Positions 54,859-57,482 of a DNA stretch of 64,000 nucleotides are shown here, one piece after another (positions within the stretch are counted from its first letter, which is position 1; each line of letters opens with the position of its first letter). Origin of the DNA: Octopus bimaculoides (lineage: Eukaryota). Below the pieces are notes generated by a model that saw nothing but the letters and a program-made list of their open reading frames with translations, was not told the DNA's origin and did no database searches. The position numbers were made by a program, and so were the translations under genes. The stretch spans positions 37,259,876 to 37,323,875 of the forward strand of contig NC_068990.1 in the NCBI RefSeq assembly GCF_001194135.2, read 5' to 3'.

Positions 54859-55651
54859 GTTAGGGATATTTTAAAATGAATGTATATATATATATATATA
54901 TATAAATAATATTAGAGAATAACAAATTTATTCCCACCTTACAGGCAAAAATCGGTATAATATTATACCGGGTTTCCTTATATATAATATATATGTATAT
55001 AACTAATTTAGAGACGAACCACCACTCTACAAATCAGTCAACTCAGAACCCGTCCAAATCCATGCTGTGAGGCATATACCATCTTAATATATCTAAGACT
55101 TTATTCTAAAATTTAAATTAAATAACATATTACATAAATAAATCATATAAATCATATAAATAAATCATAGAAATATTAATTTAAAAGTCAAATTTATAAA
55201 TTGGTGAGTAAAAATTAATACGATAATATACAGTATGGAAGTATAAATATAAAAAGTTAGTAGTAGTACATAGACTATGCGCTTTTCATGGTTGAAATAG
55301 GACTATATAAAATCGTCATAAGCAAATTCTATCAGAGTTCAATAGAACGGAGAAATTATTTTACTCCTCAAATCAGTCACTCTTCAGGCCAAATCCCTAA
55401 CAAAATACCTAAAATCATTCAAGGAATAAACATAAGAAATAAAAATATATATAAAGAGACAAAATCTGTAAACTAATCCCTACATTAATGGTATTAATAT
55501 AGTTATTAAGAGTTGCAATCTAAAAATATGATAGCAAACAAGGTTAAAACATTAAGGAATAAGTAGATAATAGTAAAAAAATGTGTTAGTGTACAAAGTT
55601 ACTAAAAGACGGATGTCAATATTGTTTGGAAAATTAAAATAAGAAAACATG

Positions 55652-55961
55652 ACTTACCTGCCGGCTGTTAACTGTAAATAAACCAAAATGGCCGTGCTAT
55701 AGAATTTATACTAAAAGGTCACGTGATAAGTATGACGTCTATTACCCAGAAGTACATGCGTATTATAATTACTAAAATAATAACGAAAATGTTGAAAAAG
55801 AAAATCTACCTAAAATAAAAAGTTACTCGAGGATTAAAAATACTAAAATACTTAAACTTGCAAATTAACGCAGAGTAATAACTATACACATACAAAAATT
55901 TTATATTACGTAAATAATGCTATGAAGATTAATACTGAAAAGTCACGTGATAAACATGGCG
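55652..55961 (-). promoter_or_regulatory. Putative promoter / first-exon cassette within the TIR element
   Basis: GTCACGTGAT E-boxes (55718-55727, 55942-55951); YY1-like CAAAATGGCCG (55684-55694) and AAACATGGCG (55952-55961); consensus minus-strand donor CAG|GTAAGT (55660-55652). Confidence 0.4.
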
Positions 55962-56147
55962 TCCATTACCAGAGGTAAATAATGTTATAATTACTAAAAT
56001 AACGAAAATATCGAAAAAGAAAATCTTCCTAAAATAAAAGGTTTACTGAAGATTAATAATACTAAAATACTTAAAACTTTCAGATTTACGCAGAATGATA
56101 ACTATACCAAATACGAAAGTTATATATTACTTAAATAATGTTATGAA
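55708..56147 (+). repeat. Diverged internal tandem duplication, period ~224 bp, 2 copies
   Basis: 55708-55926 aligns with 55932-56147 (gtcacgtgataa...ttataattactaaaata...gaaaaagaaaatct.cctaaaataaaa...aatactaaaatacttaaa...taaataatg.tatgaa). Confidence 0.9.
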
Positions 56148-57482
56148 ACATTGTAAAAGACTGCTCATATTATCGTTGAATACTTAAAGTAAAAGTAGTT
56201 ATATGTTCCAATTTTGTATAATATTGTGATGATTAAAGTGTATTCTAAAGCTAATTTGATGTATCTTACGCTACTGATCATAACTATAAGTTGGTACCTA
56301 ATCCTAGGTTTAAATAAATAAATTAGTTATCTAAACTTATATAAGTAATTTAATTTATGTCTGCATTTAATATGACGTTCATCGTGGGAGTTAAATTAAT
56401 TTTTATTAGCTAATAATATCTCTTTAAATTGTTAGGACATAATAAGCAGAATTTATCCCCTATCCTATATGATTTAGCCTTGCAAACTATTTCCCATTTT
56501 AACTCGTATTCTATTGTTTTGGGAACATTTGGGGGCTTAAATCAAAAATTTAAATTTTAGATTAAAATCTTAGATATATGAAGATGGTATATACCTCACA
56601 ACATGGATTTTTACGGGTTCTGAGTTGACTGAGTTGTAGAAAAAATAGTTAGCAGCTTAATTTCACTGAGATTATTTTGTTTTATTTTTTTAATGATTAT
56701 ATGGCATATACTAATCATATATTGAAGTTGATTTACTTAACTATATCTTTGCACTAAATGTCTGGCTTTGTTCCTGCGGAGAAATTTATTATCCTCATTG
56801 AGCACGCGCACACACATACACACACTTAATAAACACATAAGCATGCATAAACACACACAGACACTTATTGATATGCAACCAGGAATACACACATATACTC
56901 ATGCATACAAGTAGATTCATACATGCATACACTTACATAGATACTCATACAGCCACTTGGAAACACACATGCACAGACACACATTTACAGATAAACACAC
57001 ATACACATACAGAGGAATATATAAATACATGCATATATGGATACAAATGCAAGTATAGATCACCACGTGCACATATAAACACATCTACAAGTAAGAATAT
57101 GTACATCTCTACATGAATTGACACTTGCACATTCGAAGACTAACATACACACAAGCATAGACTCATGTGTGTCAAGCAGGCAAATACACACACATTTACA
57201 TATATTCAAAAGCAGACAAAAATATATGTTCATACCTACAAATAGGCACAAACACATAGATGCATGCAAAAATACAGCCCCTAGCGGAGACAAACCTACT
57301 TAAGACTAATTTGTTGTGTGGTGCATGAGGCCTTAACAGGATACAGAAATTTAAACAACTGTGTGAATTGCAACTTATTATGATTAGTTCTTTGTATTGA
57401 ATTAGTTTTCAGTTTTGTTGTATAGTTGTAGTAGCAATAATTGCTCCCCATTCATAAATATTTAATGAATGGACGTTTTTAC

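What the first reader, a model, noticed from the sequence alone, without database searches (positions are those of the whole stretch)
55028..56638. 1.6-kb TA-flanked element with 90-bp TIRs and structured non-coding cargo
The TIRs (CAAMTCAGTCAACTCAGAACCCGT..., 82/90 identical) are long for a Tc1/mariner-type TA target, and the reconstructed empty site is cactcTAgaaaa. The interior has no transposase, almost no microsatellite (unlike the rest of the window), retained CpGs and a ~224-bp tandem duplication. I cannot assign it to a named family. It may be an undescribed non-autonomous transposon carrying regulatory cargo.
Basis: partly seen in the sequence, partly recalled or inferred. Interest (0 to 1): 0.75.

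Follow-up and report, generated by a model that had tools for sequence, protein, structure and literature searches.

The report
Octopus non-autonomous TA-flanked DNA transposon
A 1.6-kb stretch of non-coding octopus DNA has the anatomy of a defective cut-and-paste transposon (90-bp inverted ends, TA on each side, no gene inside); this is an ordinary kind of genomic parasite, and its only unusual trait is a centre that has kept its CpG sites.

Summary
Window 55030-56636 (1607 bp) is bounded by 90-bp terminal inverted repeats, 82/90 identical, and flanked by TA on both sides. It has no open frame longer than 69 codons, no protein-domain remnant, no Rfam family and no RNA-fold signal. It contains a two-copy tandem repeat of about 220 bp (83% identical), no microsatellite, and the least CpG-depleted DNA in the window.

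The host is an octopus: the window's SINE-like repeats match only Octopus bimaculoides proteins and a fetched O. bimaculoides chromosome segment.

The best reading is one copy of a non-autonomous Tc1/mariner-like (TA-target) DNA transposon, moved in trans by a transposase encoded elsewhere. This is an ordinary kind of element in a genome where such families are reported.

No Dfam/Repbase or whole octopus genome was available. No second copy, empty site or autonomous partner turned up in the 89 kb of octopus DNA I could read, or in any searchable collection.

The CpG retention is real but concentrated in the central 580 bp (o/e 1.66). It fits a young element, and published data show octopus transposons are generally CpG-dense. 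Interest is low.

The parts
55028..55029 (.). Left flanking TA, candidate target-site duplication
   Evidence: Read directly. TA dinucleotide frequency in the window is 0.125, so TA on both sides by chance is about 0.016. TA is self-complementary, so it could also be read as part of the inverted repeat.
55030..55119 (+). Left terminal inverted repeat, 90 bp, starting 5'-CAAATCAGT CAACTCAGA ACCCGT (two tandem 9-mers at the tip)
   Evidence: 82/90 identical to the right arm (3 transitions, 5 transversions, K2P 0.095).
55120..55600 (.). Left interior: AT-rich, non-coding, CpG o/e 0.59
55363..55396 (+). Internal partial copy of the left terminus (ACTCCTCAAATCAGTCACTC..CCAAATCC), in direct orientation, with no mirrored partner near the right end
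   Evidence: (D17) and 46: local alignment score 34 against shuffles at 23.4 +/- 2.6, reached by the best of 300 shuffles. Weak evidence.
55601..56180 (.). Central CpG-undepleted segment: 17 CpG, o/e 1.66, GC 27%
   Evidence: Binomial p = 0.006 against the rest of the element. The ten highest-ranking of 1342 580-bp windows across the window plus L001 all lie here.
55704..55925 (+). Tandem repeat unit 1, carrying TCACGTGA (55719-55726) and TGACGTC (55733-55739)
55926..56147 (+). Tandem repeat unit 2, carrying TCACGTGA (55943-55950); about 83% identical to unit 1
56181..56546 (.). Right interior: AT-rich, non-coding, CpG o/e 0.64
56547..56636 (-). Right terminal inverted repeat, 90 bp (reverse complement starts CAACTCAGT CAACTCAGA ACCCGT)
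56637..56638 (.). Right flanking TA, candidate target-site duplication
   Evidence: Read directly.

Best explanation
This is one copy of a non-autonomous cut-and-paste DNA transposon in an octopus genome, most likely of the IS630-Tc1-mariner superfamily.

Shown:
- 90-bp imperfect terminal inverted repeats with 5'-CA...TG-3' tips.
- TA on both sides.
- No coding capacity.
- An interior unrelated to anything else in reach.

Inferred:
- A DD(E/D) transposase made by an autonomous relative elsewhere in the genome bound the TIR tips. The two tandem 9-mers CAAMTCAGW are the obvious candidate binding sites.
- That transposase paired the ends, excised an earlier copy and inserted it at the TA in the centre of cacTCTAGAaaa. 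Gap repair duplicated the TA.
- The interior is passenger DNA whose 220-bp unit was duplicated in tandem in the family's history.
- The lack of microsatellites, the lack of TG/CA excess and the retained CpGs mean the copy is younger than most of the surrounding DNA.
For: TIR, termini and TA flanks.

Non-coding. No RNA family or fold.

Host is an octopus:
- SINE-derived frames from the window hit only Octopus bimaculoides proteins.
- The same SINE families occur at up to 92% identity in O. bimaculoides chromosome CM046609.1.
- TcMar-Tc1, Mariner and Tigger families, including an octopus-specific Tc1 expansion, are reported in this genome (PMC8967140).

Youth:
- No SSR in a window with 83 bp/kb.
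- CpG o/e is 0.99 against 0.30-0.31 background, with CA/TG odds of 0.81/1.04 against 1.30/1.33.
- CpG sites in SINE copies of the same DNA decay 3.1-3.7 times faster than other sites.
- High CpG density is a general property of octopus TEs (PMC9476566).

Not bacterial, plasmid or phage DNA.
Against: - Only one copy was seen. There is no second copy in the 64-kb window or in 25 kb of O. bimaculoides DNA, and no paralogous empty site. Mobility and the TSD are therefore unproven.
- A 2-bp TSD is weak evidence on a single copy. TA is palindromic and the complementarity continues 2 nt further (TCTA/TAGA).
- No transposase partner was identified, so the superfamily rests on the TA alone.
- The two TIRs differ by 8.9%. 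If they were identical at insertion the copy is not very young, and the central CpG o/e of 1.66 would then need an origin above 2 or protection from decay.
- The left flank (54501-55029) is also only mildly CpG-depleted (o/e 0.69), so the compositional break is sharp only on the right.
Confidence: 0.7

Rival explanations
1. It is a non-autonomous TIR transposon, but of another superfamily. One option is ISL2EU, which from my own knowledge also makes 2-bp duplications. Another is an element whose true tips include the TCTA, with no duplication or a decayed one.
For: The assignment to Tc1/mariner rests only on the TA. The inverted repeat extends through the TA by 2 more nt. The tip is CAAAT rather than the common CAGT/CAGG of Tc1/pogo elements (own knowledge).
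Against: TA-flanked elements with 5'-CA tips are overwhelmingly Tc1/mariner, and that superfamily is documented in octopus. Other TSD lengths do not fit: the left flank reads ..CCACCACTCTA and the right flank TAGAAAAAATAG.., with no 3-9 bp direct repeat. Palindromic context around the TA is usual for Tc1/mariner targets (own knowledge).
Confidence: 0.1
2. It is not a mobile element. The inverted repeats arose from a local inverted duplication, or from two independent insertions of a short 90-bp repeat in opposite orientation, and the TA pair is coincidence.
For: It is single-copy in all DNA examined. Two TAs by chance has p of about 0.016, which is not negligible after choosing the boundaries.
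Against: The 90-bp unit occurs nowhere else in 89 kb and has no ends of its own. The identity stops sharply at the same distance (90 nt) on both arms. The whole block differs from its surroundings in SSR content and dinucleotide signature, as an insertion would. It is not an assembly artefact: the arms are 91% rather than 100% identical and 1.4 kb apart.
Confidence: 0.07
3. It is a transposon as above, and in addition the central tandem module is functional cargo. It would be a methylation-protected or selected promoter/enhancer-like cassette (E-box/CLEAR-like TCACGTGA, CRE-like TGACGTC, AAAATGGCC) spread by transposition. Alternatively, the family arrived very recently by horizontal transfer from a genome without CpG depletion.
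For: Central CpG o/e is 1.66 against 0.5-0.64 in the rest of the same element (p = 0.006). It is the most CpG-rich 580 bp among 1342 windows. TCACGTGA is kept in both repeat units although they differ by 17%.
Against: The counts are small: 17 CpG against 10.2 expected is not clearly above 1. The palindrome excess is not significant (p = 0.04-0.09; Fisher 0.055). Octopus TEs in general are CpG-dense and little methylated. There are no expression, chromatin or comparative data. The two units show CpG-to-TpG/CpA differences, so CpGs are not strictly protected.
Confidence: 0.08

Closest known systems
Non-autonomous Tc1/mariner elements with unrelated interiors, e.g. Tc7 of C. elegans (mobilised by Tc1 transposase) and MADE1 (from Hsmar1) (own knowledge)
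   Same: TA target. TIRs carry the transposase binding sites. No transposase gene. The interior is unrelated to the autonomous element. Movement depends on a transposase supplied in trans.
   Different: No partner element is known here, and the TIR sequence matches nothing I could search. At 1.6 kb it is larger than MITE-type derivatives, and it carries an internal 220-bp tandem repeat.
Tc1-like elements with long IR/DR-type TIRs (Sleeping Beauty, Minos, Paris, Tc3) (own knowledge)
   Same: TIRs much longer than the 28-30 bp of mariners. Repeated short motifs at the tip (here two tandem 9-mers). TA target.
   Different: There is no clear inner direct repeat inside each TIR. The one internal terminus-like motif (55363-55396) is on the left side only and is statistically weak.
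Stowaway-like MITEs
   Same: TA flanks, TIRs, non-coding.
   Different: MITEs are usually under about 600-800 bp and very numerous. This element is 1607 bp and its copy number is unknown.
ISL2EU and PIF/Harbinger elements
   Same: TIR cut-and-paste elements with very short duplications (2 bp and 3 bp TWA respectively; own knowledge).
   Different: A 3-bp TWA duplication does not fit: CTA on the left against TAG on the right. ISL2EU cannot be excluded without the transposase.

Membership tests
IS630-Tc1-mariner superfamily (as a non-autonomous derivative) | Insertion at TA with duplication of the TA | tested here: inconclusive
   TA is present on both sides of this one copy, with a chance value of about 0.016. 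There are no other copies and no empty site to confirm it.
IS630-Tc1-mariner superfamily (as a non-autonomous derivative) | Terminal inverted repeats | tested here: met
   90 bp, 82/90 identical, 5'-CA...TG-3' tips.
IS630-Tc1-mariner superfamily (as a non-autonomous derivative) | DD(E/D) transposase with paired-like/HTH DNA-binding domain, encoded by the element or by an autonomous relative sharing its TIRs | not testable with these tools
   None is encoded here. There are no transposase motifs in the window or in L001. The octopus genome could not be searched for longer copies.
Transposable element (any) | Several copies at different loci with the same ends, or a polymorphic/orthologous empty site | not testable with these tools
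   Single copy in 89 kb of octopus DNA. There are 0 hits for TIR words in the metagenome, viral and prokaryote collections, and 0 protein-level hits for element frames. None of these collections holds octopus genomes as DNA.
MITE (Stowaway-like) | Small size (under about 800 bp) and high copy number | tested here: not met
   The length is 1607 bp. Copy number is unknown.
PIF/Harbinger | 3-bp TWA duplication | tested here: not met
   The flanking triplets are CTA and TAG.
Structured RNA gene or RNA-family cargo | Match to a covariance model, or folding energy beyond shuffles | tested here: not met
   No Rfam hit reaches gathering score, and the best sub-threshold hit is 18-20 bits against cut-offs of 35-38. 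There are no tRNAs. Fold z-scores run from -1.9 to +1.8.
Catalogued repeat family (Dfam/Repbase) | End-to-end match to a library consensus | not testable with these tools
   No repeat library was available. A full-text search of papers for the TIR core found nothing.

The most novel reading that the evidence does not exclude
The element belongs to a young family, possibly acquired horizontally. Its central tandem module (CpG o/e 1.66, conserved TCACGTGA plus a CRE-like site) would be a mobile cis-regulatory cassette kept free of CpG decay, spreading promoter/enhancer activity through an octopus genome.
Probability: 0.07. Interest if true: 0.5.

Novelty: new member of a known kind. Interest (0 to 1): 0.2.

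Why it matters
As it stands this is routine repeat annotation: one more defective TA-target transposon in a genome that is about half repeats. Its modest value has three parts.

- It gives a clean example of a probably young DNA-transposon copy in octopus. Its TIRs could be used to find the autonomous partner and to ask whether Tc1/mariner-type elements are still moving in cephalopods.
- Its centre is the least CpG-depleted DNA in 89 kb. That is worth a look against octopus methylation and chromatin maps.
- The contrast with decaying SINE CpGs bears on why octopus intergenic DNA is so CpG-poor, although its transposons are reported to be almost unmethylated in somatic tissue.

Tried and rejected
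- Other copies in the window (BLAST word 9, pattern search with 3 mismatches): only the two arms.
- Exact TIR words in metagenome contigs (two scans), viral contigs and 185,579 prokaryote genomes: 0 hits.
- Whole element against plasmids and phages, distant mode: no match.
- Thirteen concatenated frames of the element against 5.8 billion proteins, to catch called or exonised copies: none at E <= 0.01.
- Exact look-up of two window ORFs and two UniRef octopus proteins: not on record.
- Only one octopus locus (L001, 25 kb) could be fetched, and it holds no copy.
- Transposase remnants: Pfam on six frames and motif regexes on the window plus L001 found nothing.
- Genes in the window: the ten longest complex ORFs have no Pfam family.
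- RNA cargo: Rfam at gathering and E-value thresholds, tRNA scan and sliding fold z-scores were all negative.
- IR/DR architecture: one weak, one-sided internal terminus-like motif, not enough to claim.
- Paralogous empty site from the joined flanks: only microsatellite hits.
- Excess of CpG-centred palindromic hexamers: not significant.
- Full-text search of papers for the TIR: nothing.
- I left the third protein-database search unused. Sampling a few hundred kb more of a 2.7-Gb genome had, by my estimate, only a few percent chance of hitting a copy.

Full report
**What is there.**
- Window 55030-56636 (1607 bp) is bounded by inverted repeats. The repeat finder reports arms 55026-55119 and 56547-56640, 94 nt and 91% complementary.
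- Aligned from the CA tip, the arms are 90 nt with 82 identities: 3 transitions, 5 transversions, K2P 0.095. The similarity stops abruptly at nt 90 on both sides.
- The 20-mer core of the arm occurs exactly twice in the window, against 0.01 expected.
- TA lies immediately outside each arm, at 55028-29 and 56637-38. The complementarity goes 2 nt further (TCTA / TAGA), so the joined flanks give cacTCTAGAaaa, with the TA in the centre of a 6-bp palindrome.
- Each tip consists of two tandem 9-mers (CAAATCAGT CAACTCAGA on the left; CAACTCAGT CAACTCAGA on the right) followed by ACCCGT.

**Interior.**
- Coding: there is no ORF with a start codon above 62 aa and no stop-to-stop frame above 69 codons. 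Pfam finds nothing in the six frames at E <= 1.
- RNA: there is no tRNA and no Rfam family at gathering score in the whole window. With permissive thresholds only three sub-threshold hits appear (13.7-19.7 bits, against cut-offs of 35 and above). Folding energies of 150-nt windows on both strands do not differ from dinucleotide shuffles (z from -1.9 to +1.8). So 'structured' applies only to the tandem repeat.
- Tandem repeat: 55704-56147, period 219-224, two copies, 83% identical.
- Base composition: GC is 26%, with A 42% and T 32% on the + strand.

**Host and surroundings.**
- The window is gene-poor eukaryotic DNA. About 25% is short tandem repeats and N gaps. It holds several SINE-like families at 70-92% identity, and its ten longest complex ORFs have no Pfam domain.
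- Frames read from those SINE-like repeats hit 11 proteins. Every hit that carries an organism name is from Octopus bimaculoides.
- One of them gave access to 25 kb of O. bimaculoides chromosome CM046609.1 (L001). It carries the same repeat families at up to 92% identity, the same N-gapped microsatellites, and the same CpG o/e of 0.30.
- The host is therefore an octopus, O. bimaculoides or a close relative.
- Published repeat surveys report TcMar-Tc1, Mariner and Tigger families in octopus genomes, with an octopus-specific Tc1 expansion (PMC8967140).

**Composition as a clock.**
- The element contains no perfect microsatellite, against 83 bp/kb in the window. It sits in the longest SSR-free run (54905-57566), and only 2% of 1.6-kb windows are SSR-free.
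- Its CpG o/e is 0.99 (0.86 after masking) against a median of 0.31, the top of all 1.6-kb windows.
- It lacks the CA/TG excess of the rest of the window: 0.81/1.04 against 1.30/1.33.
- CpG decay does act on repeats in this DNA. In three SINE families (8-11 copies each, from the window plus L001), consensus CpG positions are substituted 3.1-3.7 times as often as other positions, almost always by transitions.
- So the element looks younger than most of its surroundings.

**CpG pattern inside the element.**
- The signal is uneven. The TIRs and outer interior have o/e 0.5-0.64. The central 580 bp (55601-56180) has 17 CpG, o/e 1.66, with binomial p = 0.006 for the imbalance.
- The ten top-ranking of 1342 580-bp windows in 89 kb of octopus DNA all lie inside this element.
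- The right flank is depleted (o/e 0.26-0.33). The 500 bp on the left are only mildly depleted (0.69).
- Six of the 27 CpGs are centres of perfect palindromic hexamers: CACGTG twice (as TCACGTGA in both repeat units), GACGTC, TACGTA, CTCGAG and GCCGGC. The excess is not significant (p = 0.04, or 0.09 if the duplicated site counts once; Fisher 0.055 against the rest of the window).
- In O. bimaculoides tissues, transposons are reported to be CpG-dense and nearly unmethylated (PMC9476566). A CpG-rich transposon copy is therefore not exceptional there.

**Interpretation.**
- Long imperfect TIRs with CA...TG tips, TA on both sides, no coding capacity and a compositional break are the anatomy of a non-autonomous cut-and-paste transposon that targets TA. 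This most likely places it in the Tc1/mariner superfamily, moved in trans by a transposase encoded by an autonomous relative.
- The mechanism is inferred from what is established for that superfamily, not shown here. It would run as follows: transposase binds the TIR tips, pairs the ends, excises the element, integrates it at TA, and repair duplicates the TA.

**What could not be shown.**
- Mobility needs more than one copy or an empty site. I found no second copy in the window or in L001, and no paralogous empty site.
- There were no TIR words in metagenome, viral or prokaryote contigs, and no similarity in plasmids or phages.
- No protein in 5.8 billion resembled the element's frames, and the TIR does not occur in the full text of papers.
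- None of these resources holds octopus genomes as searchable DNA, and only one RefSeq octopus protein could be used as an anchor. The negatives therefore say nothing about copy number in the host.
- Dfam and Repbase were not available, so 'undescribed' is untested.
- The superfamily rests on a 2-bp palindromic flank in one copy. ISL2EU (2-bp duplications; own knowledge), or tips that include the TCTA, cannot be excluded.
- A weak, one-sided internal copy of the left terminus (55363-55396; score 34 against shuffles at 23.4 +/- 2.6) is not enough to claim an IR/DR architecture.

**Verdict.** The transposon reading is the best explanation (about 0.7) but remains unproven for lack of other copies. 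'Regulatory cargo' and 'undescribed' are untested. The kind of object is well known, and the only feature worth following up is the CpG-undepleted central tandem module.

Noticed in passing
window 31766-32024: A 259-bp, GC-rich (50%) element with perfect 70-bp inverted termini (100% identical), lying directly next to a (TA)n array. It has no obvious target-site duplication and no other copy in the window or L001. It looks like a very young MITE or foldback element, or a local palindrome.
   Followed up: partly
window 9552-9738, 11742-12198, 30948-31445, 35157-35841, 37984-38330, 40876-41192, 45411-45836, 49116-49977, 61700-62579; L001 throughout: There are at least three SINE-like repeat families, 70-92% identical between copies and shared with O. 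bimaculoides chromosome CM046609.1. Fragments of them are built into O. bimaculoides gene models (11 proteins), i.e. exonised or mis-annotated repeats.
   Followed up: partly
window and L001, SINE copies: CpG positions in SINE copies are lost 3.1-3.7 times faster than other positions, mostly by transitions, and background CpG o/e is 0.30. Yet published bisulfite data report octopus transposons and intergenic DNA as almost unmethylated in brain and hatchling (PMC9476566). Germline methylation or another CpG-specific mutation process would be needed to explain this.
   Followed up: no
window 54953-54970: A perfect 18-nt palindrome, CGGTATAATATTATACCG, lies 60 bp left of the element, inside a 500-bp stretch (54501-55029) that is only mildly CpG-depleted (o/e 0.69). 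It may be part of another youngish repeat.
   Followed up: no
window 3500-3950, 7990-8070, 9800-9900, 17400-17950, 57750-58250, 61480-61600; L001 430-1050, 10640-10960, 13640-14270: Runs of N in the assembly sit inside or next to (TA)n/(TG)n arrays, so microsatellite lengths here are not reliable.
   Followed up: no
L001 195-450: A reverse-transcriptase fragment of a LINE (..YLAFVDMEKAFDRVPR..VGVHQGSVLSPLL), interrupted by an N gap, in the O. bimaculoides locus.
   Followed up: no
window 55030-56636: Strand asymmetry inside the element: A 42% against T 32% on the + strand. This may mark the orientation of a former transcription unit.
   Followed up: no
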